IMG/VR virus record: IMGVR_UViG_3300020172_001601
Location: 186,001 to 250,000 of that record
DNA length: 64,000 nucleotides
Strand: one strand, 5' to 3'
Shown here: one piece after another, positions 8,134 to 56,664 of the stretch
Position numbering within the stretch: the first letter of the stretch is position 1
Layout: the number at the start of each line of letters is the position of its first letter
The notes under the pieces: model-generated
Told to the model about the DNA's origin: nothing
Database searches by the model: none
Seen by the model: only the letters and a program-made list of their open reading frames with translations
Made by a program: the position numbers and the translations under genes

Positions 8134-8161
8134 TGAACCAAAGCGATTTTCGCTCTCTAGG
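8134..8161 (+). promoter_or_regulatory. class II motif
   Basis: TGAACC-N13-CTCTCTAGG. Confidence 0.6.
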
Positions 8162-8201
8162 TTTGTGAACACTCTTTTCACAACTCACCGAGAGGTCCAT
8201 C

Positions 8202-8525
8202 ATGTCTACTGATCGTTCCGTTCCAGACGGCGGTATTAAGGTTGGTCAAGGTGCCACTTATGGCATCGGCAGCGACCGCTACCCGTATACCGTCATTGAA
8301 GTCTCAAGCCCAACTCGTGTTGTGGTTCAGGCCGACAATTATCGGCGAACCGACAATAATGGGTTCTCCGAGTCTCAGACCTACGAATACACCCCTAACC
8401 CGGATGCTTGCCAAACCATCGTGACTCGTCGTAAAGACGGTCGCTGGCGAAAGAAGGGCGATACCAAGGGTGGCGGCGTATTTTCGTTCCACGGTCGAAA
8501 TGCCTACCAAGACCCCAGCTTCTAG
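8202..8525 (+). CDS. phage hypothetical protein (ends YQDPSF)
   Basis: GAGAGG SD, 107 aa. Confidence 0.8.
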   Translation: MSTDRSVPDGGIKVGQGATYGIGSDRYPYTVIEVSSPTRVVVQADNYRRTDNNGFSESQTYEYTPNPDACQTIVTRRKDGRWRKKGDTKGGGVFSFHGRNAYQDPSF

Positions 8526-8542
8526 TCAATTTGGAAAATACC

Positions 8543-8588
8543 AGAGAGGCGACGTGAACTAAACTCACGTTCGCCTCTCTTGGTTTTT
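8543..8588 (+). terminator. hairpin plus T-tract overlapping a class II motif
   Basis: AGAGAGGCGA..TCGCCTCTCT stem then TGGTTTTT. Confidence 0.55.
8555..8583 (+). promoter_or_regulatory. class II motif
   Basis: TGAACT-N14-CTCTCTTGG. Confidence 0.7.
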
Positions 8589-8621
8589 GTGGACAGCACA
8601 ATACTCCAAAAAGGCAATACC

Positions 8622-9248
8622 ATGTCGAATGTAACGAAACAATTCGTTCTTGCGGGTCGTTCGATCTTCACTATTGAAATCCCCGAAGGCTACCGAGCCG
8701 AACATAATCTCAAGCCACACTACACTTTCCGAGTGGACCATAAGGCCCCGGAAGGCAAGTGGAAGGAAACGTGGTTCGTCAAGTACCTTACCGGGTCTGA
8801 CAATACTCGTGACTACTCCTATCTCGGCCTATTGAATGTCGAGAACGGACAGGTTCGGACTACTGCCAAGAGCAAGTTGAACGACAACAATCTTGTTGTG
8901 AAATTGCTCAATCGCACCTTGGCTCTTATTTGGGCCGGTGATGTAAACCCCATGACCGAAAAGGGGTTCGGGCTTCACCATGAGGGTCGATGTGGCAAGT
9001 GTGGTCGGGTATTGACCACGCCAGAAAGCGTTCAGCGAGGCATTGGTCCAGAATGCTGGATCAATATGAATGGTGGGCATTATCCTCATTTAGCTGTCAA
9101 AGGCGAATTTGAGGATCAGGCCCGCCAGGAAATGGAAGCCGAAGATCGTGAAGAACAACGGGCTGAAGACGGTGAATATGAGGCCGATATTGCCGAGCGT
9201 GAGGCCGTTCGGAATGCTTACTTGCATCTTTCTAACGGAACCGTGTGA
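8622..9248 (+). CDS. DUF6011-domain phage protein
   Basis: GRCGKCGRVLTTPESVQRGIGPEC. Confidence 0.75.
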   Translation: MSNVTKQFVLAGRSIFTIEIPEGYRAEHNLKPHYTFRVDHKAPEGKWKETWFVKYLTGSDNTRDYSYLGLLNVENGQVRTTAKSKLNDNNLVVKLLNRTLALIWAGDVNPMTEKGFGLHHEGRCGKCGRVLTTPESVQRGIGPECWINMNGGHYPHLAVKGEFEDQARQEMEAEDREEQRAEDGEYEADIAEREAVRNAYLHLSNGTV

Positions 9249-9817
9249 TGGACGAAGACGAATTCATCTTTGGATATGACAACGACAATCCTTATTATGC
9301 CATTCATGATTATGCTCGAAGGAATGGCTACGGCAAGTATAAGCGTCCGGTCATTCGCAGTGAAGACGCTGTTCTTGAAACCTACACGAATTGGAATTCG
9401 CCACAGGCCGATAAAGAGCGAACCATCTTCGGCGACAAGGAAGCCGATCTGTTCTACAACTATTCAGATCGCCTAGCTCAATGGGACTACGACAAGGATC
9501 GCCGGGCCAATGAATATGCAGCGTTAGTGGCACAGCCAAAAACCGCTAAGTATTTCACTGCCATGTTGTCGTATTTTCACGACGGGGCTGAAGTATCTCT
9601 CCGGCATATTGTTGCTGGCTGCAATCGCTCAAATGGTTTTCCGTATTTGGTTTACGGATACAAGTATACGACAAAGCCAGAAGATGCTGGTCGCCTTGCT
9701 GAATACGACAAGATTCGGCTGGGCAGGACCGCAGCACTGGAACAGGCAAAAACAGAATTCACTGCCAAGTTCGATGAAGCGATGGCAGACGTTTTGAAAA
9801 ATACCAATTCGGCTTGA
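9245..9817 (+). CDS. hypothetical protein
   Basis: GTGA-coupled 190-aa ORF. Confidence 0.75.
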   Translation: MMDEDEFIFGYDNDNPYYAIHDYARRNGYGKYKRPVIRSEDAVLETYTNWNSPQADKERTIFGDKEADLFYNYSDRLAQWDYDKDRRANEYAALVAQPKTAKYFTAMLSYFHDGAEVSLRHIVAGCNRSNGFPYLVYGYKYTTKPEDAGRLAEYDKIRLGRTAALEQAKTEFTAKFDEAMADVLKNTNSA

Positions 9818-9843
9818 ACCAATAGCGTATTTGGTTCTCTAGG
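9815..9843 (+). promoter_or_regulatory. class II motif
   Basis: TGAACC-N14-TTCTCTAGG. Confidence 0.65.
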
Positions 9844-9887
9844 TGTCTGTAACGAACTTAACCCCTTCAGTTTCTCGGAGAATGGTC

Positions 9888-11015
9888 ATGTCGCAGCGAG
9901 TTGTCAATTACACGGCTGGTGAAAAGGTTGAAGAATTGGTGGCTCTTGGCGATATTACCGTCAGCCACAATCCTCGTGCTTCTCTTCGTGGTGTTCTCGA
10001 TCTCTTCCACAGCGACGGTAGTGCGAGCCAGTCGCCGGAAACTCGGCAGGCATTCGTCTCGTATATGAAGGAAGAACACCCGGAAATTGACGGCCTTCGT
10101 CATTCCATCGAAGAACACGGTCTGCTTCAGCCGCCAGTGGTTCGTGCCTTCCGTGCCAAGCAGGATGGTGAATATGTCCAACGCTATGGCATCGTATTGG
10201 GCGAAGGGCGTATTCTTTCTTACGCTCTGACCGAAGCGATTACCGGCGTGGCTCAAAAGGTTCGTGTCCGTATTGAATCTCGTCTCGGCGTCGATGCCGC
10301 TTTCGAGCAGGGTTTGGCCGAAAACCTTGACCGCAACGACATGAACCCCGTCGATCTGGCGACGGCATTCCACGAGATGTTGACAATCCGCATCAATCCG
10401 GCTACAAAGTCCCCCGAAGTAAATGGGGAACCCAACCCGCTGTATTCTTCTGACAGCCCGAAGGGTCGCCCATATACGCTCAAGGAACTGGCCGAACGTG
10501 TCAATAAGACATATTGGTGGGTTCGGGATCACGAAGCGATTTCGTACCTCCCGGATAACCTGAAGTCACAGTGTATCAAGTCGTGGCAGTCGGGCAAGCG
10601 CAATGTCACCCGGTTCTGCAAGTTGGGATTGAAGTACAAGGCTCAGGTCACGGGACAGCCGGAAGAAACCGGGCTTGACAGCCAGACTGGAACAAACGAT
10701 ACTGTTGTCGCAAATGACGGAACCACGACGCAACTTGTCGGAACTTCGTCGGAAACAACCCAGGTTACGCAGCTTACCGCTGCCGTGGAAACTTCGATTT
10801 CCCTCGAACCTGCACAACGTCGTCGTGTCCTTAGTCTGAAGTCGGTGGTGGGACTGTTCGACGGAACGGCATTGGAAAACAAGGAGCGGCTGGCAACGCT
10901 GGCTGAAGTGATGGGAATCACGCTTGAAGAAGCACTGACCGAACGAGATTTACGTCTCGCTAATCAGGCCGATACCCAGGCTCGCAAGCAGCAGCGACAA
11001 CTGGCAACTGCTTGA
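9888..11015 (+). CDS. ParB/RepB/Spo0J family protein
   Basis: NPRA, LRHSIEEHGLLQPPVVR, GEGR, AENLDRNDMNPVD, HTH YTLKELAERVNKT; GGAG SD 7 nt before ATG 9888. Confidence 0.8.
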   Translation: MSQRVVNYTAGEKVEELVALGDITVSHNPRASLRGVLDLFHSDGSASQSPETRQAFVSYMKEEHPEIDGLRHSIEEHGLLQPPVVRAFRAKQDGEYVQRYGIVLGEGRILSYALTEAITGVAQKVRVRIESRLGVDAAFEQGLAENLDRNDMNPVDLATAFHEMLTIRINPATKSPEVNGEPNPLYSSDSPKGRPYTLKELAERVNKTYWWVRDHEAISYLPDNLKSQCIKSWQSGKRNVTRFCKLGLKYKAQVTGQPEETGLDSQTGTNDTVVANDGTTTQLVGTSSETTQVTQLTAAVETSISLEPAQRRRVLSLKSVVGLFDGTALENKERLATLAEVMGITLEEALTERDLRLANQADTQARKQQRQLATA

Positions 11016-11033
11016 AATAAACCAAGAGAGCGC

Positions 11034-11062
11034 TGAACCAAACGGCATCGGCGCTCTCTTGG
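11034..11062 (+). promoter_or_regulatory. class II motif inside a 14-bp perfect inverted repeat (11020-11064), upstream of sigma gene
   Basis: AACCAAGAGAGCGC-TGAACC...-GCGCTCTCTTGGTT. Confidence 0.75.
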
Positions 11063-11089
11063 TTCATAGGATGACCGAACTTAATCAGG

Positions 11090-12145
11090 ATGAATCCCCA
11101 ACCGTCAAAGGAGAAGATCGTGGACTTTCAAGAAATTCCTTACGTCAAGTTGTCAGGTGGCCAGAAGAAGAAAGCCCTCGAAATTCTTGGTCGTGGAAAC
11201 GTCCTCTTGAAGAAGTGGGCTGCGTTCTTCCCACCGAAGAAGTATCGCCTGTTTCGCAACGCAGTGATGGAAGGCAGCACGAACCCTCAGCACGATGGCA
11301 AGGCGGCGATCCCGTCCAATATGCTGAAAGAGTTCCACTCGGACTTACCGTTCATGACGGCGATCCGTCACAACAAATACGATGATCTCGACGGTCGTTC
11401 TGTCGAACAGGCGATCCTCGAAGGGTTCAGCGCTCTCGCCAAACGGCACGCCCGCAAGTGGTCACTCGAAGGTGATCCGGTCGGATTGACCAAGCAAGAC
11501 TTCCTACAGGAAGCCTACATGCAGGTCATCGAAGCGATGTACTCGTGGATGCCCGAACACAATGTCGATATTTCGACGTTCATTTGGGTGTCGTTGAAGA
11601 ACCGGATGAGCAATGTCGTCAACCAACAGGGCAATATGCTCTGTCCGTTGACCAACTCCGACTTGGAGTTGATGAGCCGATTCGAGCAGACGAAGCGTGG
11701 TATGCCACAGTATGTCACGTTCGATCAGATCATCAACCAACTTGGGTTGTCGGCTGAAGAAGGGAAGCATCTGAATACGCTGTTGACTCGTGTATTCGCC
11801 GAGAATCAGTTGGGTGGTCAACAGGGCGATCAGCACGACGATATGAGCGCCACGGGCAACGATTACACCGGGCATCGTGTTGGTGTGGATCGTGAGTCGG
11901 AAACCGAAACCGTTCTGCAAGAGCAGCACGTCTTCGATACTCTGAGCCGGGCTGGACTGTCGGTACTGGAACGACAAGTGATTGAAGCGGCGATGGAACC
12001 ATTCCACGGATGGCAGACTGAATTCGCCAAGACACACATCAATCCGGCTACCAACAAGCCATACTCACGAATGAGAATCACACAGGTTCTCGAAATGGCA
12101 CGAGAAAAGGTCGCAAAGACCTTAGAGCGACAAGAAGCGGCCTAA
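11090..12145 (+). CDS. sigma70-family RNA polymerase sigma factor
   Basis: Region 2-like DFLQEAYMQVIEAMYSW..ISTFIWVSLKNRM; region 4-like LSVLERQVI..YSRMRITQVLEMAREKV; alternative GTG start 11120 with AAGGAG SD. Confidence 0.85.
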   Translation: MNPQPSKEKIVDFQEIPYVKLSGGQKKKALEILGRGNVLLKKWAAFFPPKKYRLFRNAVMEGSTNPQHDGKAAIPSNMLKEFHSDLPFMTAIRHNKYDDLDGRSVEQAILEGFSALAKRHARKWSLEGDPVGLTKQDFLQEAYMQVIEAMYSWMPEHNVDISTFIWVSLKNRMSNVVNQQGNMLCPLTNSDLELMSRFEQTKRGMPQYVTFDQIINQLGLSAEEGKHLNTLLTRVFAENQLGGQQGDQHDDMSATGNDYTGHRVGVDRESETETVLQEQHVFDTLSRAGLSVLERQVIEAAMEPFHGWQTEFAKTHINPATNKPYSRMRITQVLEMAREKVAKTLERQEAA

Positions 12146-12164
12146 CCGATGATGGGTCAAAGAG

Positions 12165-12193
12165 AAAGCCGGGGATAAAACCCCGGCTTTTTT
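12165..12193 (+). terminator. intrinsic terminator
   Basis: AAAGCCGGGG-ATAAAA-CCCCGGCTTT TTT. Confidence 0.9.
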
Positions 12194-12202
12194 ATTGCGC
12201 CG

Positions 12203-12231
12203 TGAACTAAAGAGAGGTTTGACTCTCTAGG
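12203..12231 (+). promoter_or_regulatory. class II motif, likely leaderless mRNA
   Basis: TGAACT-N14-CTCTCTAGG, ATG 5 nt later. Confidence 0.7.
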
Positions 12232-12236
12232 ATTTT

Positions 12237-12929
12237 ATGAACTACCAAATCATCACCGACGAAGCCAAGCTGGACGAATTCATCAGCTTCCTGCCCGATA
12301 TTGAAGACACAGAGGTTTACTACCTCTGTCTATTCGGTCGGCACAAGTATGCTGCTGAGTTTCCCAATACAAAAGACAGTGGGCAACTGGCTCGTATTGC
12401 TTCTCGTAAGAGTGATCTCAAAGAGAAGATTCGTCGGCTGGAATCCCCGCTGGGTTCTTTCTCACGGGACGGTGCTGTGGCTCCGCAGGAAGCATTGGCT
12501 GTCTATATCGGCCTGAACCCCAGGTCGCTTATTCAGGCCAATAAGAAGCTATTGGTTGAATTGGCGACTCGTATTGCCGAAGGCGATCTGAGTTTCAATC
12601 CGATCTCTGCCGCAACCACCGAAATTCATCGTGCCGTTTCTCGTAAGTTCTTTGTGGACTTCGACTACGATCATGTTGAGCCTGCTGATTATCTTCCCAA
12701 AATCAAGGAAATTCTGCCTGCCGGGGCTTATAAAGTCCTGAAAACACGGGGCGGTTTTCACCTGATTATTGAATTGGCGAAGATGAATAAGCCTCTCAAG
12801 AAGGATTGGCATAAGCTATTGGCTTCTCTGCCAAATTGTGATGTTCGAGGGTCTAAGAATCTGACCCCGGTTCCCGGATGTACACAGGGAGGTTTCACGC
12901 CGTATTTTGTCGCCTTGAACCAAGAGTGA
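12237..12929 (+). CDS. hypothetical protein with AEP primase-like motifs
   Basis: FFVDFDYD (hhhDhD) and KTRGGFHL (sxH-type) motifs. Confidence 0.45.
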   Translation: MNYQIITDEAKLDEFISFLPDIEDTEVYYLCLFGRHKYAAEFPNTKDSGQLARIASRKSDLKEKIRRLESPLGSFSRDGAVAPQEALAVYIGLNPRSLIQANKKLLVELATRIAEGDLSFNPISAATTEIHRAVSRKFFVDFDYDHVEPADYLPKIKEILPAGAYKVLKTRGGFHLIIELAKMNKPLKKDWHKLLASLPNCDVRGSKNLTPVPGCTQGGFTPYFVALNQE

Positions 12930-12944
12930 ACTTCGCTCTCTTGG
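12916..12944 (+). promoter_or_regulatory. class II motif
   Basis: TGAACC-N14-CTCTCTTGG in CCAAGAG/CTCTTGG stem. Confidence 0.65.
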
Positions 12945-12945
12945 C

Positions 12946-12952
12946 CTATATA
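12946..12952 (+). promoter_or_regulatory. class III (late-type) motif CTATATA
   Basis: 5 nt before ATG 12958. Confidence 0.6.
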
Positions 12953-12957
12953 CCAAC

Positions 12958-13596
12958 ATGATGACCTTCAAGGAATTTTTAATGGCCGACACCGTAAACC
13001 TTCGGGAAGTTGCCCTGTTTGACTCGCCGTCTTTGTTCAAGGAAATGGCCGTTCTGAACCAGAACGCTATTGCCAAGACTCAGACGGCGATGCAATTCAT
13101 TCATAACAACAATATCCCCGGTGTCATTATCGGCGGTATTGCCGTCGCCAACTATACCCATGACCGGGCGCTGACCCCGGACGTGGATTTTTTGACGCCC
13201 AATATCGCTGGTTTGAAGACCCTGCTACAACAGCAGAATATTCCTTTCCAGCCATTAGCTTCCAGTGGTGAGTTTGGTGGTATCTATGTTCCGTCGCTCG
13301 ATGCCGACTTCTTGGACGTGTCCGAGGGCAATGTCGGATTGAACCGTTATATCATGCAGACCGCTACGACTGCCAAAATTGGTGGCGTGTCTTTCCCGAT
13401 TATTGACGCAGCAGTATTGACCATCATGAAGTTCATTATCGGTCGTGACAAAGATCAGACTGATGCCTTCAAACTGCTGCCTACTGTGCCGAAGGCGACT
13501 CTCAAGACTCACCTGAAGGCGTTGGGTCGATACTTGCCGGAAGACATGAATGCACAAACGATCTGGAGCTATGCCAAGGCAATGTCTCCAGGTTAA
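12958..13596 (+). CDS. nucleotidyltransferase (Pol-beta fold) with capsid-targeting-like N-terminus MMTFKEFL
   Basis: VIIGGIAV..RALTPDVDFL and K..GRDKDQTD motifs. Confidence 0.75.
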   Translation: MMTFKEFLMADTVNLREVALFDSPSLFKEMAVLNQNAIAKTQTAMQFIHNNNIPGVIIGGIAVANYTHDRALTPDVDFLTPNIAGLKTLLQQQNIPFQPLASSGEFGGIYVPSLDADFLDVSEGNVGLNRYIMQTATTAKIGGVSFPIIDAAVLTIMKFIIGRDKDQTDAFKLLPTVPKATLKTHLKALGRYLPEDMNAQTIWSYAKAMSPG

Positions 13597-13597
13597 T

Positions 13598-13626
13598 TTT
13601 ACAGTTCCCTTATTCTGTGGTAAAAT
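13598..13626 (+). promoter_or_regulatory. class I promoter
   Basis: TTTACA-N17-TAAAAT. Confidence 0.75.
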
Positions 13627-13646
13627 CCCAAATAAGGGGCATTGCG

Positions 13647-14465
13647 ATGCCTTTTTCAAATGCTCAAGAAAGACCAACAATGCCTTCGATCCATATCAGC
13701 AATTTCGTGCGCCGTCAGACCGTTCAAAGCGGTTTCTCTCATTGGACTCTCACTGACGAGGAATTGCTGGCACGCATTCAGGCCAACTTCGACAAAGCCA
13801 AGCCGGGCTATCGGCCCGATGTATTGCTTGTGCCTATTGAGCCAGACGGCTTCTTCAGCAGCACTGTATTGCTCCGTGAGGGCGACAAGTTCGTGGGCGA
13901 GTATGTTGCTCGCAAGGCCGGGGAAGACCCCCGCAAGTCCACCTACGTCGTCTCCAACAGCCTTGGCGAGCCTGTAGAGAAGATTGAGGCAGTTCGTGTC
14001 GATGTTGTTCTCTATTCGCACGCTGCACTGGCCGAAAACAACGAGAATGACACTGACGCTGACTATGAAATCATTAGCGTCAATGCCAGCGCCACGGACG
14101 AAGAGGCTCCGATTCCTACTGGTGCATTGATTGCTAACCACTTGCAACTGAGTGGTGGGACTTCTACCAAAATGACCGACACTGAATTTGTGGAATTGCT
14201 CCGCAAATCAGTGATGTACTGGAAAGACAAGTCACTGGCTTGCCCCGAACATCTGAAGCCGCCGAAGGATGATCGCATTGATCGAATCAACGGTTTTATG
14301 CAAGAAACCGTTGCCCGGCTTTATGATGATATTGAAAAGTTGGGGACCAAGGTTCAAGATGAATTAGGGCATTTGCTGCCTCAGCCGCAGAACGACCGAG
14401 AACGGGTAATGTTCCTGTCTGGTCAGATTAGTTTGGGATTGTTCGTTCAGGGAGCTACGTCGTGA
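13647..14465 (+). CDS. DUF3228 family protein
   Basis: FVRRQ, GYRPDVLLVP, ARKAGEDP, DVVLYSHAALAE, YEIISVNA, GGTS. Confidence 0.7.
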   Translation: MPFSNAQERPTMPSIHISNFVRRQTVQSGFSHWTLTDEELLARIQANFDKAKPGYRPDVLLVPIEPDGFFSSTVLLREGDKFVGEYVARKAGEDPRKSTYVVSNSLGEPVEKIEAVRVDVVLYSHAALAENNENDTDADYEIISVNASATDEEAPIPTGALIANHLQLSGGTSTKMTDTEFVELLRKSVMYWKDKSLACPEHLKPPKDDRIDRINGFMQETVARLYDDIEKLGTKVQDELGHLLPQPQNDRERVMFLSGQISLGLFVQGATS

Positions 14466-15082
14466 AGACTACAGAGGTTGGCGTGGTTTGTTCTTCGTCA
14501 TTTTGCAAGAAAGTTCGTGGCAAGGGCGCAAAGCCTTGGCGATGCTGTAATCAGTGTGGCTCTCCCGTTTGTTTCAATTGTCGAGGGAGTCATATTCCTG
14601 AAGAAGAAATTCTATGCAACGCTTGTGATAAGATTGCATATGAACAAAAAGTCGCTTTAAGAAAAGCGACTCCTGTGGAATGCAAAGGGTGCAAAGCAAA
14701 TGTACTCCCCGATGAAACAAAGACGCATTATTTTCTTGGCACACACGGATTTCAACTTTGTAAATCCTGCATTCAGGTTGTCGAAAATGTTCGTGACTTC
14801 GAGGCGAAAGAAAGCAGGAAGTTAAAAGCCCAGCCCGGTCTAGTGGAAGTTACTTATGGAATTTGTCAACCAAAAGAAGACGGCGGCACAGGCTATGCTT
14901 ACCGTAAAGGCAATCTCGATTTGCAACTTGGAGACATTGTTCTGCTTCCTCCTACTTGCCTGGATCGAGAAATAAATGGCAAGTACGACAACCACGAGGG
15001 AACGGTGGTGTCCACTTACTCGGACTATTCTGGAATTGCTTCATCAATCGTTGGATTGGTAAGAAAGGCACAAAATGGCTGA
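14462..15082 (+). CDS. Cys-rich (multiple CxxC) hypothetical protein
   Basis: Several CxxC pairs; GGAG SD. Confidence 0.7.
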   Translation: MKTTEVGVVCSSSFCKKVRGKGAKPWRCCNQCGSPVCFNCRGSHIPEEEILCNACDKIAYEQKVALRKATPVECKGCKANVLPDETKTHYFLGTHGFQLCKSCIQVVENVRDFEAKESRKLKAQPGLVEVTYGICQPKEDGGTGYAYRKGNLDLQLGDIVLLPPTCLDREINGKYDNHEGTVVSTYSDYSGIASSIVGLVRKAQNG

Positions 15083-15617
15083 TACTATTCCAACACGCAT
15101 CGTAGTTAATGGTCAAGAAATGACCCTCGATGCCGCTCCACGTTTCACTTGTATTGTTCATCAGCAGGGCTTCCGGGTAAACATCCCGGAGTTCGTTGAG
15201 ATCAATAGTCGCAATACTATTGAGTGCATGGAGAAGATGAGTCAACGTGCCTGGGAGCATATCAGCACCGGGCAATTGTTTCAGGTTCTTTTTCGTGAAA
15301 TCTTCCCCGAAGAAGATTGTTCTGTGCCGATCCCAGCAACTATTGCCGAGTTGAATGCTGGTGACTTTGGTGTTGTCCACGCAGCCGGGATGATTACATT
15401 GGGCTGTGAAGCCATCTTTGAGGGCAAGACCAAACTGTTCTTTCGCACGCCAGAAGATCATCTTCACCCGAAGGCCGAACGTCGTATCATCGGAATGTTC
15501 AGAAAGATGCAAGAGCTATTGGCTCCTGATGAAGAAGCCGGAGTAGCTACTACTGAGTCACCAGATGATGAAGATGGCGACGAAGACGCCATTGAATCAG
15601 AACAGAAGGATACATAG
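15075..15617 (+). CDS. hypothetical protein, acidic tail
   Basis: Overlap-coupled 180-aa ORF. Confidence 0.7.
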   Translation: MADTIPTRIVVNGQEMTLDAAPRFTCIVHQQGFRVNIPEFVEINSRNTIECMEKMSQRAWEHISTGQLFQVLFREIFPEEDCSVPIPATIAELNAGDFGVVHAAGMITLGCEAIFEGKTKLFFRTPEDHLHPKAERRIIGMFRKMQELLAPDEEAGVATTESPDDEDGDEDAIESEQKDT

Positions 15618-15621
15618 TGTT

Positions 15622-16500
15622 GTGTCAAATCAACAAAAAATCCGCAGTGACATTTCTGATCGGGTGCTAGAAGCACTCAAGGCTGGCGCACCGCCTTGGC
15701 GTTCTAAGTACAACCGTGGATTCCCTACGAACCCTCAAACGGGTCGTAAGTTCACAGGCATCAATCCACTTATATTGGATGCCGTCGCTGATAAACACAA
15801 ATACCGTAGCAGGTATTGGGCCACTTATCATCAATGGCATGTATTGGGCATTCAGGTGCCTAAGCGTCCAGCAAACATTGAGGCTGGCGACTTCGGCATC
15901 TGTATCGTCAATTGGCAATCGTTTGTCAAGACGGTTGACCGAGGCGACATTCTACGAATGGAGCGATTTCCATTATTGCAAACACACTTGGTATTCAATG
16001 CCGAGCAGTGCTTTGGTAAGACCTGTGGGAAATATCTAATCCTCAAGGAAAACACACAAGAGCCGGATTACACCCAGGCCGAGGCCATTATTGAGGCGAC
16101 ACGGGCCAATATCCGTGAACATGGTTCCGTTAGGAAGCCTCGATATGATCGCCCTACGGATCGCATTCTCTTTCCGACTCGGAAGAACTTCTTGAATGAT
16201 GCCCAATATTGGGCAACCAAATTTCATGAAGTAATTCACTGGACAGAAGGTCGCATTGGGTGGGTTGGCACTGTCGATCAGGGCGAGTTGATTGCAGAAA
16301 TCGCCACTGGCTATCTGGAATCGGAATTGGCTCTGCCGCACGACATGGATACGGCAAACCACGACAAGTGGATGCCGACGTGGATTGAAAACATCGAGAA
16401 GAATCCCAAGTATCTCTTTGATGCAGCGGCCCAGGCCGCTCGTGCCGTGGATTATATCCTTGGCTTCACTAGAGTTCAGGAACGAGAAGACGTGATTTGA
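15622..16500 (+). CDS. ardC: ArdC-like antirestriction ssDNA-binding protein with zincin-like C-domain
   Basis: LKAGAPPWR..NPQTGRKFTGIN..WATYHQW; FHEVIHWT..ELIAEI; start approximate. Confidence 0.85.
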   Translation: MSNQQKIRSDISDRVLEALKAGAPPWRSKYNRGFPTNPQTGRKFTGINPLILDAVADKHKYRSRYWATYHQWHVLGIQVPKRPANIEAGDFGICIVNWQSFVKTVDRGDILRMERFPLLQTHLVFNAEQCFGKTCGKYLILKENTQEPDYTQAEAIIEATRANIREHGSVRKPRYDRPTDRILFPTRKNFLNDAQYWATKFHEVIHWTEGRIGWVGTVDQGELIAEIATGYLESELALPHDMDTANHDKWMPTWIENIEKNPKYLFDAAAQAARAVDYILGFTRVQEREDVI

Positions 16501-16506
16501 TCTGGT

Positions 16507-16535
16507 TTTACAACAGACTTTTTCCGTGGTATAAT
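16507..16535 (+). promoter_or_regulatory. class I promoter
   Basis: TTTACA-N17-TATAAT. Confidence 0.8.
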
Positions 16536-16590
16536 CTGTCGTTTTCCCCTTGAACATAGACATTGGACTATAACCAAAAGACAAGGTGCT

Positions 16591-17952
16591 TTGATGAAAG
16601 ACATGCAAACGTGGGTTGATTTCGCCAAGCAACAGAAGAGTTGGGCGGTCGATTCCACAAATCGTGGAGACATTCCTCCGACCATTATTGTTGAGCGTGA
16701 TGGCGAAGTTCTGGCCATCGTGATTTCGCCGGAGATTGACAAGCGATACGGTCTGCAAGCTGCATCCATGTGTCAGGCTGGGTTCGACCCCGACGCCTTG
16801 ACTATGGTTGTGGATGCTCACATCCATCAAGGCAAAAGCAAGGAAGGCCAGACAATCGAAGAGGCCAAAGAGGAATATCATAAGAAATTCCCCAAGGGTA
16901 TGCAACATGCCTGTGACAATGAAGACGCATGTGCCACTGGTGAAATCACCGATTGTCTGGTGTGCCACCGCATCACTCGTGATGGCAAGATCACGATGGT
17001 AACACTGCCATATTCATATCACGGCAAGGACGGCGGCGTGCCATTCAAGTGGCTCGATGAAGATGAACGCTACAAGGACATGGGCAATATGTCCGAAAAC
17101 AACGAAGGCGTTCGGTTGGAAGGCTTCATTCCCGACAGTCTTCGTCAAATCATGCAGACTCCTTCCATCCTTGAACACATTCCTCAGTTGCAGCAGATGG
17201 CTGATGCCAACGAGTTCACGCCAGAGCGTGTTCGTTACCATACGGCACGAGCTATTATGGCGATGATGACCGCCAAGAAGTTCGTGGTCGCCGACTTCCT
17301 TTCGGGCAGACACCCGGAATGGACCGGAGCCAAAGAGACTGGCAAGGAAATGCTCTCCAAGATGATTGAAGGCGGCATCTTCCCGAAGGAAGCCTACGAA
17401 CCGATCAAAGACATTATCGACAACCATATTGGCACCAGAGCGTTCGCTGACAAGTTGACGGCTTTGCTTACAGCCAACTCGTATTGGTTGCCGGGTGAAA
17501 TCCGTGAGGATATTCCCAAGTTCGTTTCGGAACTCGAAAGCATCTGCATGTCTCCTGTCATCCCGAAGGGCTTTGGTCCAGATGGCGACGGAGACGAAGA
17601 AGACGAAGAAGATGAAGACGATGACTCCGAACCGCAGCGGGTCCGAGTTTGGAATGGCGATCAGAGTGAGTTTTTGGGCGAAGGCAACTATGTCGGCAAT
17701 GTGGCAATCTATGCCATTGAAATGCCAGATGGTTCCCTCCGATCCAATACGAATGCTGAAGTCGAACCTGAAGAAGTGCCTGAAGGTGGTGTTGTTCGGA
17801 AAATGAAGAACAATCCCAAGATCGTTCTGGACAACGGCCAGACTGTGTATGGCTGTCAGGTCTGGTGGGAACCAGTTGAAGATGAAGGGCCGGGTGCTGC
17901 TAGTGCAGCCAGTCCTCACCAACACGGTCCTGGGTGTAAGCACAATCACTAA
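16591..17952 (+). CDS. multi-domain hypothetical protein with acidic linker
   Basis: 453-aa ORF after promoter. Confidence 0.8.
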   Translation: MMKDMQTWVDFAKQQKSWAVDSTNRGDIPPTIIVERDGEVLAIVISPEIDKRYGLQAASMCQAGFDPDALTMVVDAHIHQGKSKEGQTIEEAKEEYHKKFPKGMQHACDNEDACATGEITDCLVCHRITRDGKITMVTLPYSYHGKDGGVPFKWLDEDERYKDMGNMSENNEGVRLEGFIPDSLRQIMQTPSILEHIPQLQQMADANEFTPERVRYHTARAIMAMMTAKKFVVADFLSGRHPEWTGAKETGKEMLSKMIEGGIFPKEAYEPIKDIIDNHIGTRAFADKLTALLTANSYWLPGEIREDIPKFVSELESICMSPVIPKGFGPDGDGDEEDEEDEDDDSEPQRVRVWNGDQSEFLGEGNYVGNVAIYAIEMPDGSLRSNTNAEVEPEEVPEGGVVRKMKNNPKIVLDNGQTVYGCQVWWEPVEDEGPGAASAASPHQHGPGCKHNH

Positions 17953-17965
17953 TTGAAGGGCAACA

Positions 17966-18259
17966 ATGGAAATCGAGATTAAAGTTAGTCCTCGATGGGA
18001 AGAGGCTGATCTTGCCAAGCGTATTGCTCGCATTGTTGCCAGTGACGATACCTGTTGTGAAAAGAAGTCTGGCGGCTATGAATGGGCGCTAGACTATCGT
18101 GGCAACGATTGGTGGATGACCGGCATTCAAGACGTTGAGGGCCAGAAATACAAAATCGTCAAGGTGGCATATCGCTACGGTGGCGGCGGCAGCAACAAAG
18201 ATATGATGGAAGCCCTCAAGGTCTTTTTGCAATGGGAGGTTGGGATTCATGAAGATTGA
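17966..18259 (+). CDS. hypothetical protein
   Basis: Packed co-directional ORF. Confidence 0.7.
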   Translation: MEIEIKVSPRWEEADLAKRIARIVASDDTCCEKKSGGYEWALDYRGNDWWMTGIQDVEGQKYKIVKVAYRYGGGGSNKDMMEALKVFLQWEVGIHED

Positions 18260-25313: not shown

Positions 25314-25342
25314 TGAACTTGGGGAACACTTCACTCTCTAGG
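25314..25342 (+). promoter_or_regulatory. class II motif
   Basis: TGAACT-N14-CTCTCTAGG. Confidence 0.7.
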
Positions 25343-27610: not shown

Positions 27611-27823
27611 ATGATTCCGGGCAATTGTCTGGTTTGCGCACTAGCAATCTGGCTAGTGCATGGCGGGGAAATCATTAGGAGTTATCGACCGGGAACGAGA
27701 ATACCGCATTGGCTAGTCAAGTGTCGAGACGGCCTGATTAGGCACTTCACGGTTGAAAAGAACATACTCCCTAAGCCATTTTGCTATCTCGTTTTCCTTG
27801 GCCGATTTGAAAGATCGGGTTGA
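27611..27823 (+). CDS. small hypothetical protein
   Basis: GAGGG SD, 70 aa. Confidence 0.6.
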   Translation: MIPGNCLVCALAIWLVHGGEIIRSYRPGTRIPHWLVKCRDGLIRHFTVEKNILPKPFCYLVFLGRFERSG

Positions 27824-27849
27824 ACCAACCGTGGCGTCTGCTCTCTTGG
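27821..27849 (+). promoter_or_regulatory. class II motif
   Basis: TGAACC-N14-CTCTCTTGG. Confidence 0.7.
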
Positions 27850-53319: not shown

Positions 53320-53348
53320 TGAACTCCATGAAGAGTTTGCTCTCTAGG
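53320..53348 (+). promoter_or_regulatory. class II motif
   Basis: TGAACT-N14-CTCTCTAGG. Confidence 0.7.
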
Positions 53349-53349: not shown

Positions 53350-53586
53350 ATGCAGCAGATGCAATCACCACCACAAGCAGGCGAAGTTTGGATCAACATC
53401 CACACTAGCTCTAAGGTGACGATTCAACGTGTAGAAGAAGTTGCTCAAGCCAGGGGTGGGTTGGTTGTCGTATACGACCAACCCAATTGGAAGAGTCAAC
53501 GATGCAATATTGAAACTTTCAATGTCAATTGGAAGCGTCACAAACCAGCCAGCAAGTGGTTCTTGGGAGCCTTCAATTCGGAGTGA
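53350..53586 (+). CDS. hypothetical protein
   Basis: ORF after tandem promoters. Confidence 0.6.
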   Translation: MQQMQSPPQAGEVWINIHTSSKVTIQRVEEVAQARGGLVVVYDQPNWKSQRCNIETFNVNWKRHKPASKWFLGAFNSE

Positions 53587-53590
53587 TAAA

Positions 53591-54601
53591 ATGGGCATGT
53601 TCAGTTGGAAGTGCAAAGGCTGTGGCCACGAACTCATTGAACGAGAATTAGTCCGTTTGAACGGACAGGTTCAAGAGTATGATGGCTATGGTGGATCAGC
53701 CGCCAATAGTGGCGATTATGATCCTTCTGCATGGCACAACCGCTGTTACAAGAAGGCATCCCGTCCACACCAGCTTGAAGAGTCCGCAAGCAGCCACGCC
53801 CCGAACCAAGGATTCGGCCCATCGAAGCTAGAGTTTTTGTCTGGATACGATGAAAATGTTCCTGTCGGTGAATTCACCGTTATGGTTTATGCAAGTCATC
53901 ATACGGAACAGGAAAGCCGTCAATTTGACTTTTACTACACCAACAACGGAAAGCTGGAAGACCAGCGTGAATATCAGGAGCAATACGACAAGGCTGGCGA
54001 AGATGCCGAATTCGACTACGACGCATGGCTGAAACTGTCAGATGCCGACCGGGAAATCGCACACAAAGAACATCAAGACAAGCTCCGATTGTCTGTTGAG
54101 GTATTGTTAGGCTCGGCTATGCCTCGAATCAATGCCAAGACCTTTGCATCATTGCAAGAGGCAATCGACGCAGTGGACGCTGTGTTGCCAGAACTCCCCG
54201 CTGAATTAGGTGGCGAATACGACTTAACCATTTATGGAAAGCAGGGCAAGATTGAAGGCGCTGTTTACCAACGCTCTGTTAGTCGAAAATACGACCGCAC
54301 TGGCGAGAATTGGGTCAAGTTGGACGTATTGGAAGTCGAAGAATCATATCGTCTCGGCTCAGACAAAGCTGGCCTTGCCGATGAACAGTTGGATTTGGCA
54401 ATAGAACGATTCAACGAAGCCCAACAAGCGCTCAATGATGCTTCCGAGGCACTTGGTCGTGCTGCACAACCGTTCGTCAACACAGACGACAAAGAAAAGC
54501 TACATGAATTGGCTGATCGTCTGCCAAAGGCGTGGTCAGGAGTTCGTAGGGTTTACGAAAAGCTAATTGGGCTTGAACCTGACAAAGAGCAAACTCTCTA
54601 G
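53591..54601 (+). CDS. hypothetical protein
   Basis: 336-aa ORF; N-terminal CKGC. Confidence 0.75.
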   Translation: MGMFSWKCKGCGHELIERELVRLNGQVQEYDGYGGSAANSGDYDPSAWHNRCYKKASRPHQLEESASSHAPNQGFGPSKLEFLSGYDENVPVGEFTVMVYASHHTEQESRQFDFYYTNNGKLEDQREYQEQYDKAGEDAEFDYDAWLKLSDADREIAHKEHQDKLRLSVEVLLGSAMPRINAKTFASLQEAIDAVDAVLPELPAELGGEYDLTIYGKQGKIEGAVYQRSVSRKYDRTGENWVKLDVLEVEESYRLGSDKAGLADEQLDLAIERFNEAQQALNDASEALGRAAQPFVNTDDKEKLHELADRLPKAWSGVRRVYEKLIGLEPDKEQTL

Positions 54602-54632
54602 GAGATTGCAAACCAACAATAGGAGTAGCGAA

Positions 54633-54938
54633 ATGCCTTCAGTATACGAAATGGAACATGAGCCAGAAGTTGCCAAAGTCCTTGATGGGATGCGGCTGAA
54701 AATGGCTGAAGTGTTCGGCGTTACTGTCACAGGCAATCGCTGCACAGTTCGATGGACTATGGATGGGCAGTTGGTCGATGTTCACATGATTATTGAGAAC
54801 GTCACCACGCCCGATGAACATCGCCAACATATGGAGCAATACGCTCGTATGGAGGCCCTGCTCAAGAAATACGAAAAGAAGTTTCCCGATCTCCGGGAAG
54901 AACTCGCTCACGCTGAAACTGGTGAATGGAGCAAGTGA
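54633..54938 (+). CDS. hypothetical protein
   Basis: AGGAG SD. Confidence 0.7.
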   Translation: MPSVYEMEHEPEVAKVLDGMRLKMAEVFGVTVTGNRCTVRWTMDGQLVDVHMIIENVTTPDEHRQHMEQYARMEALLKKYEKKFPDLREELAHAETGEWSK

Positions 54939-55660
54939 TGAAAGACACAATTGAAGTTGGAATCTACTCGCACAATTTGTCAATTTCATTTCATGAAGTG
55001 GAAGGCGAAGAATATCAAGTAAATTTCTACGCCAGTCTAATGGGCTATTTAGGAGAAAGCGACGACGACGTTCAAGTTGCTCATGTGGAAGGAACCATTG
55101 CCACATTGCCTCACAGGGTTGGAAAAGGAATAAACAGAATATTTCCATTAGAAGTTGGAGAGCATTTTTATGCTTATCCGGCACTGTCTCCATTGTATCT
55201 TGCAAACGGTCATTTGAGTGACCGCATGTGGGCAAAAGTTGGTGGAGATGAGTTTTCAACAAGAGCAATCTATGTTGATAAAGTGGTAGTAGAAAAAGGC
55301 TTCACTTCCACCAATCTGGGAGCGAAGTTGGTAATCGCTGCCATGAAACTCATTTACAAAATTCTTCAGGAAGAACTGCCAGTCATTGCCATTCTTGGCA
55401 GTTACGATGGATATGCCGAACGTGGAAAATCGGTAAGAAAATATTTCAAGAGGCATGGGTTCAAACCACTCAAGCCGAAAGAAGAATTGGCTCATTTTTT
55501 GCCAATATCGACTATCAGAATGGCACCTAGCATTGAAGATGTTCAAGTTTTTTTTAGCGAACAAAAGAAAAACAGAAAGCTAAAGAAGAAGTCGCTTACT
55601 TTGCGAGAGCAGCTTGCTCTTGCAAATGCAAATTCAAAAGGAGCAAGTGATGAAACGTAG
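54938..55660 (+). CDS. GNAT-fold-like protein
   Basis: IYVDKVVVEKGFTSTNLGAKLV..RKYFKRHGF; tentative. Confidence 0.5.
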   Translation: MKDTIEVGIYSHNLSISFHEVEGEEYQVNFYASLMGYLGESDDDVQVAHVEGTIATLPHRVGKGINRIFPLEVGEHFYAYPALSPLYLANGHLSDRMWAKVGGDEFSTRAIYVDKVVVEKGFTSTNLGAKLVIAAMKLIYKILQEELPVIAILGSYDGYAERGKSVRKYFKRHGFKPLKPKEELAHFLPISTIRMAPSIEDVQVFFSEQKKNRKLKKKSLTLREQLALANANSKGASDET

Positions 55661-56096
55661 CAAGCCCTACATCGACCCCGAAAGAATCGAAGAACCACCT
55701 GAAGTGGACCTGGCGCAACTGCGTCAACTCACTGAGCAGGCCATTCAGCGGGGCAAATGGAAAGAAGAAAAACGACTGGCTGACATTAAGGCCGAAGAAG
55801 AACGCAAGGCCAAACGTGACCAGTTGTTCGCAGCTACGGTATTGGCCGAGTTTCCCGACAAGTGTGAGAAGGAAGCAGGTCGAGGCCGATCCCACGCCAT
55901 CATCATGGGTCTGAAATACGACCGAGATTACACCTACCAAGGCAGTAATTTCAATACGTTGTCGCATGACCGACTTACAGGCCCAGGAGCAATAGTCTGG
56001 AACTACCTGCAAGCAGCCGGACTCAAACCCACTATTGAGTATTGGCACGACGGCATGGGCATGGACAGTGGCTTTAACATCGTAGTTCATTGGTAA
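55650..56096 (+). CDS. hypothetical protein
   Basis: AAGGAG SD. Confidence 0.7.
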   Translation: MKRSKPYIDPERIEEPPEVDLAQLRQLTEQAIQRGKWKEEKRLADIKAEEERKAKRDQLFAATVLAEFPDKCEKEAGRGRSHAIIMGLKYDRDYTYQGSNFNTLSHDRLTGPGAIVWNYLQAAGLKPTIEYWHDGMGMDSGFNIVVHW

Positions 56097-56107
56097 GGTA
56101 CTAATCC

Positions 56108-56632
56108 ATGTGCATGACTCAACGTGTTGCTTCTGAAAAGCTAGTCTCTTTGGTGCCGCAGAGTGCCTACAAGGTGTTCTCCCGCACCAAAGATGGACAG
56201 CTTCAGTCTGTCTTTGTCCCGACCTTCAAAGCGGGATTGATCTATCCACCCAATCAACGCATTCGAGTGGATACTGAAGACGCCACGTTCTTCGCCTTCG
56301 AGAACTTCAAGAACGCAATATCCATTGCCCGGCAAGGCCGCAAGCGATGGAATATGGTCAACGGCGACCTAATCGTATTGCCTGTCACAATGCACGAAAT
56401 CGTCGCAACAGGCAAGTACCACGTCCCCAGCGAAGACATTCAGTGCTTGGATGGGTATTACCCAGCCTTCGAGTCCAAAGAAATCGAAGTTCACGACTCT
56501 GAGGAAAATCGCAACGCCTTCTACGACGCTGTATTGTCGCAGTGGTTGAAGACAGCACAATATGGCATGTCCAAGATCGACAAAGAGGCTTTTGCCGCTC
56601 GTGTTCCACACTTGGCCGAAGTTTTCAAATAG
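56108..56632 (+). CDS. hypothetical protein
   Basis: Packed ORF. Confidence 0.7.
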   Translation: MCMTQRVASEKLVSLVPQSAYKVFSRTKDGQLQSVFVPTFKAGLIYPPNQRIRVDTEDATFFAFENFKNAISIARQGRKRWNMVNGDLIVLPVTMHEIVATGKYHVPSEDIQCLDGYYPAFESKEIEVHDSEENRNAFYDAVLSQWLKTAQYGMSKIDKEAFAARVPHLAEVFK

Positions 56633-56635
56633 CCT

Positions 56636-56664
56636 TGAACCTGAGAGCTAAGTCGCTCTCTTGG
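56636..56664 (+). promoter_or_regulatory. class II motif
   Basis: TGAACC-N14-CTCTCTTGG with GAGAGC/GCTCTC stem. Confidence 0.7.

What the first reader, a model, noticed from the sequence alone, without database searches (positions are those of the whole stretch)
8142..56660. Class II sites are built into hairpins that pair the CT-rich box, with different arms at different sites
Seen: 14-bp perfect IR at 11020-64; 10-bp arms plus inner stem at 8543-80; CCAAGAG/CTCTTGG (12920-44); AGAGAG/CTCTCT (12211-28); GAGAGC/GCTCTC (56643-60); GAACCAA/TTGGTTC (9816-37); AACCAA/TTGGTT (27823-51); AGCGA/TCGCT (8142-54); TGGGGA/TCTCTA with G:T pairs (25320-40). The 53320 copy is weak. The partner arm differs between sites, so pairing rather than sequence looks selected. 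Established: N4 virion RNAP uses hairpin promoters. Inference: cruciform or ssDNA-dependent promoter gating, or RNA hairpins in read-through transcripts (terminator or processing sites) overlapping the promoter.
Basis: partly seen in the sequence, partly recalled or inferred. Interest (0 to 1): 0.62.

Follow-up and report, generated by a model that had tools for sequence, protein, structure and literature searches.

The report
Phage promoters nested inside terminator hairpins
In an uncultivated giant phage, two of eleven copies of a phage-specific promoter lie inside long hairpins that relatives keep through compensating base changes, most likely terminators that stop upstream transcripts where new ones start. 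The other claimed pairings look like chance.

Summary
The motif is real. TGAAC-N16-TCTCTWGG occurs 20 times (25 when relaxed) in the 340-kb phage record, always on the + strand and always at gene ends or before genes. It has the shape of an ECF-type sigma promoter, and the phage carries four sigma-like genes.

The claim that these sites are built into hairpins holds for only two of the eleven window copies.
- **Supported:** 8540-8584 and 11020-11064 fold far better than shuffles (z -6.7 and -7.2). The orthologous junctions of six to eight related megaphages keep both hairpins with different arm sequences. Nine of 12 pairs at one site and 7 of 13 at the other show compensatory double changes.
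- **Not supported:** the other nine sites fold no better than shuffles (z -1.7 to +1.7), and relatives do not keep their short pairings.

In both real hairpins the 5' arm fills the gap after the upstream stop codon. The loop holds the -35 box, the 3' arm is the spacer end plus the -10 box, and a T-rich tract follows.

Best reading: an intrinsic-terminator-like RNA hairpin acts on read-through transcripts and is fused to the next gene's promoter. Transcripts from that promoter lack the 5' arm and so escape it. Class I (sigma70-type) promoters of the same genome show the same nesting. No RNA data were available. N4-like or cruciform gating is not supported.

The parts
8134..8162 (+). Class II promoter copy, TGAAC-N15-TCTCTAGG, upstream of ORF 8202-8525. 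No significant hairpin.
   Evidence: Fold z -0.95.
8202..8525 (+). 107-aa ORF (phrog_33370, function unknown). Its TAG stop at 8523-8525 precedes hairpin 1.
8540..8584 (+). Hairpin 1. The 5' arm is 8540-8557, the loop 8558-8564 and the 3' arm 8565-8584. The first three bases of the -35 box lie in the 5' arm and its last two in the loop. The 3' arm is the spacer end plus the -10 box.
   Evidence: RNA MFE -29.3, z -6.67. Kept in L094-L098, with 7 of 13 pairs showing double changes. Cognate arms fold to -25.8 against -15.9 for non-cognate arms.
8555..8583 (+). Class II promoter nested in hairpin 1 (TGAAC 8555-8559, TCTCTTGG 8576-8583).
8584..8590 (+). T-rich tract (TTTTTGT) directly after hairpin 1. 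It coincides with the expected start region of the nested promoter.
   Evidence: Tail counts.
9815..9843 (+). Class II promoter. Its TGA is the stop codon of ORF 9245-9817. The GAACCAA/TTGGTTC pairing is not significant and is not kept in relatives.
   Evidence: z -0.57.
9843..11015 (+). ParB-like ORF, used to find relatives. Its TGA stop is at 11013-11015.
11020..11064 (+). Hairpin 2: a 14-bp perfect inverted repeat (11020-11033 with 11051-11064) that extends inward. The loop holds the -35 box and the 3' arm is the spacer end plus the -10 box.
   Evidence: RNA MFE -32, z -7.16. In 8 orthologues, 9 of 12 pairs show double changes and 97.9% of cells are paired, against 37-60% when the partner is slid.
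11034..11062 (+). Class II promoter nested in hairpin 2. It drives the sigma-like ORF.
11090..12145 (+). Sigma-like ORF of 351 aa, with weak matches to Sigma70 region 2 and TIGR02937, both below the cut-offs.
12169..12193 (+). Separate canonical terminator (CCGGGG, 6-nt loop, CCCCGG, then CTTTTTT) just upstream of the next class II promoter.
   Evidence: The orthologous terminators are kept in L094-L096 and L099.
12203..12231 (+). Class II promoter. The 6-bp AGAGAG/CTCTCT pairing in its spacer is not significant and is lost in L096 and L099.
   Evidence: z -1.50..
12916..12944 (+). Class II promoter. Its -35 box and half its spacer lie in the coding end of ORF 12237-12929. The CCAAGAG/CTCTTGG pairing is broken in L095, L099 and L102.
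   Evidence: z -1.67..
25314..25342 (+). Class II promoter upstream of the SNF2-type helicase ORF 25354-27558. No hairpin.
   Evidence: z +1.72..
27821..27849 (+). Class II promoter. The AACCAA/TTGGTT pairing comes from the promoter consensus itself.
   Evidence: z -0.38..
53320..53348 (+). Class II promoter. No hairpin.
   Evidence: z +0.65.
54574..54602 (+). No significant hairpin.
   Evidence: z -1.73.
56636..56664 (+). Class II promoter. The 6-bp GAGAGC/GCTCTC pairing is kept with one G-T pair in L110 and lost in L111.
   Evidence: z -1.27..

Best explanation
Class II sites are promoters for host RNA polymerase carrying a phage-encoded sigma factor of the ECF kind. They have a -35 box TGAAC, a fixed 16-nt gap and a -10 box TCTCTWGG.

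At two junctions in the window (8540-8584 and 11020-11064) this promoter is fused with an intrinsic-terminator-like hairpin. A third such junction lies outside the window at genome 280450. The parts of the hairpin are laid out as follows:
- The 5' arm sits in the short non-coding gap after the upstream stop codon.
- The loop carries the -35 box.
- The 3' arm is the end of the spacer plus the -10 box.
- The T/G-rich stretch that follows every class II -10 box serves as the U-tract.

The hairpin forms only in RNA that reads through from the upstream gene. It ends or stabilises that RNA within a few bases of where the nested promoter starts. Transcripts from the nested promoter begin 3' of the hairpin, lack the 5' arm and so are immune to it. 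This insulates each gene, notably the sigma-like gene 11090-12145, from upstream read-through in a genome with almost no intergenic space.

Shown: the motif, the hairpins and their covariation. Inferred: promoter activity, RNA-level action and termination.
For: **The motif behaves as a promoter.**
- It has 20 strict and 25 relaxed copies, all on the + strand, with none for the control pattern.
- All copies lie at gene ends, 9-122 nt before start codons. One lies 13 nt before a tRNA.
- The same bipartite motif sits at orthologous junctions of relatives with 45-91% protein identity, with lineage variants CGAAC, CGAAG, CCTCT and GGTCTTCC.
- The phage has four sigma-family genes. No RNA polymerase beta domain was found in the 340 kb held. 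The search for a T7-like polymerase is uninformative because its control was silent.

**The two hairpins are real.**
- z is -6.7 and -7.2.
- Every orthologue has z between -3.8 and -8.4.
- RNAalifold finds 9 of 12 and 7 of 13 pairs with compensatory double changes.
- 97.9% of cells are paired against 37-60% when the partner is slid, and 0 of 500 shuffles reach that value.
- A 5' arm joined to its own core folds to about -25 kcal/mol, against about -16 when joined to another orthologue's core.

**The terminator reading.**
- The 5' arms begin 5-15 nt after the stops of co-directional genes.
- Hairpin 1 is followed by TTTTTGT. The orthologues of hairpin 2 in L095, L097, L099 and L102 are followed by TTTTTGT, TTTGTGT or TTTTAGT.
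- Other class II promoters have a separate canonical terminator just upstream, at window 12169-12193 and genome 58420.
- Class I promoters at genome 179542 and 139055 sit inside GC-rich hairpins followed by T-rich tracts of 7 T and of TTGTTT.
- L098 has such hairpins at three class II junctions and a loop-over-the-minus-10 form with a T tract at a fourth. The fusion has therefore arisen repeatedly.
Against: - No RNA data: no RNA run was listed, so no transcript start or end has been observed.
- In the window itself, hairpin 2 is followed by TTCATAGG, a poor U-tract. Its loop is 11-17 nt, longer than in canonical terminators.
- T enrichment after the hairpins is modest: 3.8-4.4 T against 3.3 T in 9 nt, P = 0.04, and the sites are not independent.
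- The + and - strands fold equally well and G-U pairs are few, so covariation cannot tell RNA from DNA pairing.
- Two other promoter-overlapping hairpins, at genome 162689 and 163572, have no T tract.
- The sigma factor that reads class II has not been assigned.
Confidence: 0.6

Rival explanations
1. The two hairpins act in RNA as processing or stability elements rather than terminators. They could be an RNase III-type cleavage site or a 3' exonuclease block at the end of the upstream message. This would resemble the RNase III sites that lie next to promoters in phage T7.
For: The stems are 17-19 pairs with bulges, long enough for a double-strand-specific RNase. Hairpin 2 in the window, L094, L096 and L098 has a poor U-tract. 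Hairpins at genome 162689 and 163572 have no T tract.
Against: Hairpin 1 and most orthologues of hairpin 2 carry a T-rich tract directly after the stem. Canonical terminators occupy the same position at neighbouring junctions. Nothing here tests cleavage.
Confidence: 0.2
2. This is DNA-level gating. Under negative supercoiling the inverted repeat extrudes as a cruciform, or as a single-strand hairpin as at N4 virion polymerase promoters. That would hide or expose the -35 and -10 boxes and so switch the promoter.
For: The arms cover the -10 box and flank the -35 box. Both strands fold equally well, with DNA MFE about -20 kcal/mol. Covariation is equally compatible with DNA pairing.
Against: At least 19 of 25 class II promoters have no significant hairpin. 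The central spacers are 7-17 nt and the stems have bulges, which disfavours extrusion (established knowledge). The geometry is unlike N4 promoters. No phage RNA polymerase was found, and the 3114-aa ORF has no match to any family or solved structure. The A-rich and T-rich flanks and the position just after stop codons have no role in this model.
Confidence: 0.1
3. The inverted repeats are operators for a dimeric DNA-binding regulator that overlaps the promoter.
For: Inverted repeats flanking a -35 box are a common operator layout. A ParB-like gene and several helix-turn-helix genes lie nearby.
Against: The arm sequences differ between the sites of one genome. They also change freely between orthologues while staying complementary. 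That is the signature of nucleic-acid pairing, not of recognition by one protein.
Confidence: 0.03
4. The short pairings at the other nine sites are also selected, as weak hairpins that tune the promoter or read-through.
For: There is a slight excess of 6-bp stems on the CT box after removing the two long hairpins: 4 of 23 against 1.4 expected, P = 0.05. The 56643-60 pairing survives in L110 through a G-T pair. The 12211-28 pairing shifts register but persists in L095.
Against: None of these sites folds better than shuffles. The pairings are lost in L096 and L099 (12204 site), in L095, L099 and L102 (12917 site), in L094-L096 (9816 site) and in L111 (56637 site). The 12917 spacer is under coding constraint. 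The AACC/GGTT pairing follows from the promoter consensus.
Confidence: 0.1

Closest known systems
ECF (group 4) sigma promoters, for example the E. coli sigma-E type GGAACTT-N16-TCTRA (my own knowledge)
   Same: Both are bipartite, with a GAAC-containing -35 box, a rigid 16-nt gap and a short pyrimidine-rich TCT-type -10 box. The genome encodes small sigma factors with regions 2 and 4 only.
   Different: The -10 box is longer (CTCTCTWGG), and there is a conserved ATCG about 6 nt upstream of the -35 box. The cognate sigma is not identified and no transcription start is mapped.
Intrinsic (Rho-independent) terminators
   Same: Both have a stable stem directly after a stop codon, followed by a T-rich tract and preceded by an A-rich tract. 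Hairpin 1 has a 7-nt loop and a TTTTTGT tail.
   Different: The 3' arm and the U-tract are at the same time the -10 box and the start region of a promoter, and the loop holds its -35 box. Hairpin 2 has a long loop and, in this genome, a weak U-tract.
Phage T7 RNase III sites that lie beside or over T7 promoters, such as R1.1, R3.8, R6.5 and R13 (my own knowledge, Dunn and Studier 1983)
   Same: Intergenic RNA hairpins share a few tens of bases with phage promoters in a tightly packed genome.
   Different: T7 uses its own single-subunit polymerase and the hairpins are cleavage sites. Here the promoters are sigma-type and a terminator role is more likely. Cleavage was not tested.
Coliphage N4 virion RNA polymerase hairpin promoters
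   Same: An inverted repeat lies within a phage promoter.
   Different: N4 hairpins are 5-7 bp with a 3-nt loop, are required at every early promoter, and are read as single-stranded DNA by a giant virion polymerase. Here stems are 12-19 bp around the -35 box, most promoters lack them, and no such polymerase was detected.
Sigma cascades of large phages such as SPO1 gp28 and gp33/34, T4 gp55 and phiEco32 gp36 (my own knowledge; PMC4331800 for phiEco32-like phages)
   Same: The phage has several sigma-family genes and at least two promoter classes. One sigma gene lies behind a class I promoter and another behind a class II promoter.
   Different: There are four sigma-like genes in a genome of over 340 kb from an uncultivated lineage. 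The timing of the classes is unknown.

Membership tests
Sigma-70-family (ECF-type) promoter | Two conserved boxes with a fixed spacing of 16-17 nt | tested here: met
   TGAAC and TCTCT are 16 nt apart in 23 of 25 sites, and 15 and 17 nt apart in one site each.
Sigma-70-family (ECF-type) promoter | Oriented with the genes and placed just upstream of them | tested here: met
   There are 20 hits on the + strand and 0 on the - strand. Sites lie 9-122 nt before start codons, and one lies 13 nt before a tRNA.
Sigma-70-family (ECF-type) promoter | A cognate sigma factor is available | tested here: inconclusive
   Four sigma-like genes are present. Which of them reads class II could not be tested.
Sigma-70-family (ECF-type) promoter | Transcription starts 6-9 nt after the -10 box | not testable with these tools
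   No RNA run was listed.
Intrinsic terminator | A stable stem, more stable than chance | tested here: met
   z is -6.67 and -7.16. Covariation supports the stems.
Intrinsic terminator | A short loop of about 3-8 nt | tested here: inconclusive
   Hairpin 1 has a 7-nt loop. Hairpin 2 has 11-17 nt with an inner 2-bp stem. Orthologues range from 4 to 11 nt.
Intrinsic terminator | A U-tract directly after the stem | tested here: inconclusive
   Met at hairpin 1 (TTTTTGT) and at the hairpin 2 orthologues in L095, L097, L099 and L102. Weak at hairpin 2 in the window, L094, L096 and L098.
Intrinsic terminator | Lies downstream of a co-directional gene | tested here: met
   The stops are at 8523-8525 and 11013-11015, and the 5' arms start at 8540 and 11020.
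Intrinsic terminator | Transcripts end there | not testable with these tools
   No RNA reads were available.
N4-type hairpin promoter | A 5-7 bp stem with a 3-nt loop at every promoter of the class | tested here: not met
   Nine of 11 window sites have no significant hairpin. The two real hairpins have 17-19 pairs around the -35 box.
N4-type hairpin promoter | A giant virion RNA polymerase related to T7 RNA polymerase is encoded | tested here: inconclusive
   PF00940 found nothing, but its control was silent too. The one giant ORF (3114 aa, genome 312408-321752) matches no Pfam, PHROG or PDB sequence. The record is 69% complete.

The most novel reading that the evidence does not exclude
Nesting a promoter inside a terminator hairpin may be a general design rule of this megaphage family, used with both promoter classes and re-invented at different junctions in different lineages. 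It may do more than save space. It would release RNA polymerase exactly on the next promoter, so that the core enzyme, which is known to stay on DNA after intrinsic termination and to reinitiate nearby (PMC6978380, PMC6978322), is handed straight to a new sigma-dependent start. That would couple the end of one transcription unit to the start of the next.
Probability: 0.12. Interest if true: 0.65.

Novelty: new variant of a known kind. Interest (0 to 1): 0.42.

Why it matters
The finding gives a well-supported promoter class for an uncultivated family of giant phages, with related contigs up to 673 kb. These phages appear to run host RNA polymerase with several sigma factors of their own.

It also shows, with covariation evidence, a compact layout in which a terminator-like hairpin and the next promoter share the same 45 bases. 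The -10 box doubles as a stem arm, and the promoter's transcripts escape the hairpin.

This layout is a useful annotation rule for such genomes, because promoter and terminator predictors that mask each other's sites would miss it. It is also a natural template for compact insulating parts. It does not reveal a new mode of promoter recognition.

Tried and rejected
- **Megablast of window 8000-28000 against cultured phages:** no match.
- **ParB-like protein against IMG/VR by pattern:** no relative.
- **Motif scan of IMG/VR:** 78 mostly single chance hits. Two records, G001 and G002, carry 3 and 2 oriented copies but no homologue of the ParB-like or sigma-like genes, so I did not use them as orthologues.
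- **RNA runs:** none was listed.
- **Consensus terminator scan:** uninformative. Its loop limit excludes these hairpins, and the counts equal those of shuffles.
- **Rfam:** no family in the window.
- **Strand asymmetry and G-U counts to tell RNA from DNA pairing:** no difference.
- **T-tract enrichment:** only modest.
- **My first natural-sequence null:** it wrongly included the reverse-strand copies of the same hairpins. I corrected this.
- **My permissive hairpin finder (at least 8 pairs, G-T allowed, one mismatch):** it flags nearly every site, so I used it only together with an energy cut-off.
- **TAG as a sense codon, tested because of the two CUA tRNAs:** there is no sign of recoding in the 340 kb held, so I kept table 11 throughout.
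- **Literature search for described promoter-in-terminator fusions in phages:** nothing specific was found.

Full report
**Context.** The window is bases 186001-250000 of a 340,341-bp IMG/VR virus record that CheckV rates 69% complete. It is therefore part of a very large phage genome. It has no near relative among cultured phages. Most genes lie on the + strand with almost no intergenic space.

**The motif.**
- The strict pattern occurs 20 times in the record, all on the + strand, with no hit for the backwards control.
- A relaxed pattern gives 25 credible sites, 11 of them in the window.
- The aligned consensus adds an ATCG about 6 nt upstream of the -35 box, a C after TGAAC, a G/C before CTCTCT and a T/G-rich stretch after WGG.
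- Sites lie 9-122 nt before start codons, and one lies 13 nt before a tRNA.
- At six or seven sites the TGA of the TGAAC box is the stop codon of the upstream gene. At three sites the TAG of CTCTAGG is.
- This is the anatomy of a sigma-70-family promoter of the ECF kind.
- The record encodes four sigma-like proteins: FliA-like (180 aa), ECF-like (232 aa), RpoD/RpoS-like (315 aa) and a weak one of 351 aa at window 11090-12145.
- No RNA polymerase beta domain was found. A T7-like polymerase search was silent, but so was its control.
- A second, more numerous promoter class is present: TTTACA, 13-14 nt, TGGTAnAAT, which is sigma-70 type with an extended -10 box. It has 46 copies on the + strand.

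Only two are more than chance.
- Folding 61 nt around each window site against 200 dinucleotide shuffles gives z -6.67 for the 8556 site and z -7.16 for the 11035 site. The other nine sites fall between -1.73 and +1.72.
- Pooled tests show an excess of perfect stems of at least 6 bp on the CT box. A column-permutation null gives 6 of 23 sites against 1.4 expected, reached in 0 of 300 permutations. The other CTCTCT occurrences of the genome give 6 of 25 against 1.5 expected, P = 0.003.
- Without the two long hairpins the excess is borderline, at 4 of 23 against 1.4, P = 0.05.

**Relatives.** The ParB-like ORF 9843-11015 has 31 homologues of 41-100% identity in metagenomes, on contigs up to 602 and 673 kb. 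I fetched nine syntenic loci, L094-L103, of 45-91% protein identity, and two more, L110 and L111, for the 56-kb region.
- All carry the same kind of promoter at orthologous junctions, on the + strand only.
- Lineage variants are CGAAC or CGAAG at the -35 box, and CCTCTAGGCT or GGTCTTCCTG at the -10 box.

**Covariation.**
- At the ParB-to-sigma junction, eight orthologues keep a hairpin whose inner arm differs from genome to genome. The pairs are GCGC/GCGC, TGCAGA/TCTGCA, GTTTGGT/ACCAAAC, CGCAGA/TCTGCG, GGAAAA/TTTTCC, ATCGCAAA/TTTGCGAT and, in L098, an 18-pair stem.
- RNAalifold predicts 12 pairs there, 9 of them with compensatory double changes.
- 97.9% of cells are paired against 37-60% when the 3' partner is slid by 1-3 columns. 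No shuffle out of 500 reaches the observed values.
- Even the first base of the -35 box (T or C) covaries with a spacer base (A or G).
- At the junction after the 107-aa ORF, six orthologues give 13 pairs, 7 of them with double changes.
- A 5' arm joined to its own core folds to about -25 kcal/mol. Joined to another orthologue's core it folds to about -16.
- The most distant relative, L101, still has a 14-bp hairpin around the -35 box at the ParB junction.
- The short pairings are not conserved. The 9816 pairing is broken in L094-L096, the 12204 pairing is lost in L096 and L099, and the 12917 pairing is broken in L095, L099 and L102. The 12917 spacer is also coding sequence. The 56637 pairing is kept with one G-T pair in L110 and lost in L111.

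**Anatomy of the real hairpins.**
- The 5' arm starts 5-15 nt after the stop codon of a co-directional gene.
- The loop carries the -35 box, whose first two or three bases lie in the stem.
- The 3' arm is the end of the spacer plus the -10 box.
- An A-rich tract precedes the stem and a T/G-rich tract follows it.
- Hairpin 1 is followed by TTTTTGT, so it looks like a textbook intrinsic terminator.
- Hairpin 2 has a weak tail in this genome. Its tail is TTTTTGT, TTTGTGT or TTTTAGT in L095, L097, L099 and L102.
- A third site with the same layout lies at genome 280450.

**The same idea elsewhere in the genome.**
- The neighbouring class II promoter at 12203 has a separate canonical terminator just upstream, at 12169-12193.
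- Class I promoters at genome 179542 and 139055 sit inside strong hairpins of -29 and -31 kcal/mol. There the 5' arm is the promoter spacer, the loop holds the -10 box, and the 3' arm is followed by a T-rich tract.
- In L098, three of five class II promoters in 11 kb have the window-type nesting and a fourth has the loop-over-the-minus-10 type with a T tract. One of these is the orthologue of window 9816, which has no hairpin here. The fusion is therefore gained and lost at individual junctions.

**Mechanism (inference).**
- The hairpin forms in RNA that reads through from the upstream gene. It terminates that RNA, or at least caps its 3' end, within a few bases of the nested promoter's expected start.
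- Transcripts from the nested promoter start 3' of the stem, lack the 5' arm and are not terminated.
- Each short transcription unit is thereby insulated. These include the sigma-like gene, whose junction hairpin is the most deeply conserved.
- The overlap costs no extra intergenic space.

**What I cannot show.**
- RNA against DNA pairing cannot be settled, because the two strands fold equally well and G-U pairs are few.
- Termination against processing cannot be settled.
- Which sigma reads class II is unknown.
- No RNA run was listed.

**Rivals.**
- A processing or stability hairpin is the main rival (0.2).
- Cruciform or N4-like gating (0.1) is disfavoured because most promoters of the class have no hairpin. 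The geometry is also wrong, the loops are long and the stems are bulged.
- A protein operator (0.03) is disfavoured because the arms vary freely while staying complementary.

**Verdict.** The promoter class is real and strong. Two of its eleven window copies are nested in conserved, covarying hairpins, and the remaining pairings are chance or at best marginal. This is a new variant of known elements, a terminator-promoter fusion, in a new phage lineage, and it is of moderate interest.

Noticed in passing
window 1550, 4135, 13598, 16507, 21541, 24376, 28434, 30651, 39040, 44459, 47739, 53270, 59429, 63548 (start of TTTACA): A second, more numerous promoter class: TTTACA, 13-14 nt, TGGTAnAAT (sigma-70 type with an extended -10 box). 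The record has 46 copies on the + strand and 4 on the - strand. It precedes the ECF-like sigma gene at genome 62375.
   Followed up: partly
G000 genome 179542 and 139055 (outside the window); also 163572 and 162689: Class I promoters, and one class II promoter, are nested in strong hairpins of a second type. The 5' arm is the spacer, the loop holds the -10 box and the 3' arm covers the start region. Those at 179542 and 139055 are followed by T-rich tracts; those at 163572 and 162689 are not.
   Followed up: partly
L007:1539-1612 and L007:2236-2306 (genome about 182011 and 182708): There are two tRNAs with anticodon CUA, which reads the amber codon. The first lies 13 nt after a class II promoter. 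A crude test found no sign of TAG recoding in the 340 kb held, but 31% of the genome is missing.
   Followed up: partly
window 9815-9817, 27821-27823 and five or so sites outside the window; window 54600-54602: Promoter boxes double as stop codons. The TGA of TGAAC ends the upstream ORF at 6-7 class II sites and the TAG of CTCTAGG does so at 3. Some of the short upstream ORFs may not be real genes.
   Followed up: partly
L112 (genome 312408-321752, + strand): An open reading frame of 3114 aa has no Pfam, PHROG or PDB sequence match.
   Followed up: partly
genome 48022-48564, 62375-63073, 155954-156901; window 11090-12145: There are four sigma-family genes in one phage: FliA/WhiG-like, ECF-like, RpoD/RpoS-like and a weak 351-aa one. 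The last sits behind the class II promoter with the conserved hairpin.
   Followed up: partly
L098:3777, 4931, 6172, 7319; L101:4931, 6175, 8563, 10845: The promoter consensus drifts between lineages. L098 has CGAAG-N16-CCTCTAGGCT and L101 has CGAACC-N16/17-GGTCTTCCTG. This should be mirrored by changes in the cognate sigma and could be used to identify it.
   Followed up: no
window 66695-equivalent, genome 66677-66723: A tandem duplication of TGAACCTGATCG lies at one class II site, giving two -35 boxes 18 nt apart.
   Followed up: no
window 53441-54601: The positional counterpart of this ORF in relative L111 (1711-2679) carries a precomputed Gp23 (T4 major capsid) Pfam hit. The window ORF itself has no Pfam hit at E 0.01. 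It lies behind both a class I promoter (53270) and a class II promoter (53320).
   Followed up: no
L038, L041, L055 (IMG/VR record of 223 kb) and L031, L089 (49.6 kb): Two other viral records carry oriented copies of the same promoter pattern. They have no homologue of the ParB-like or sigma-like genes, so they may be distant relatives or users of a similar sigma.
   Followed up: partly
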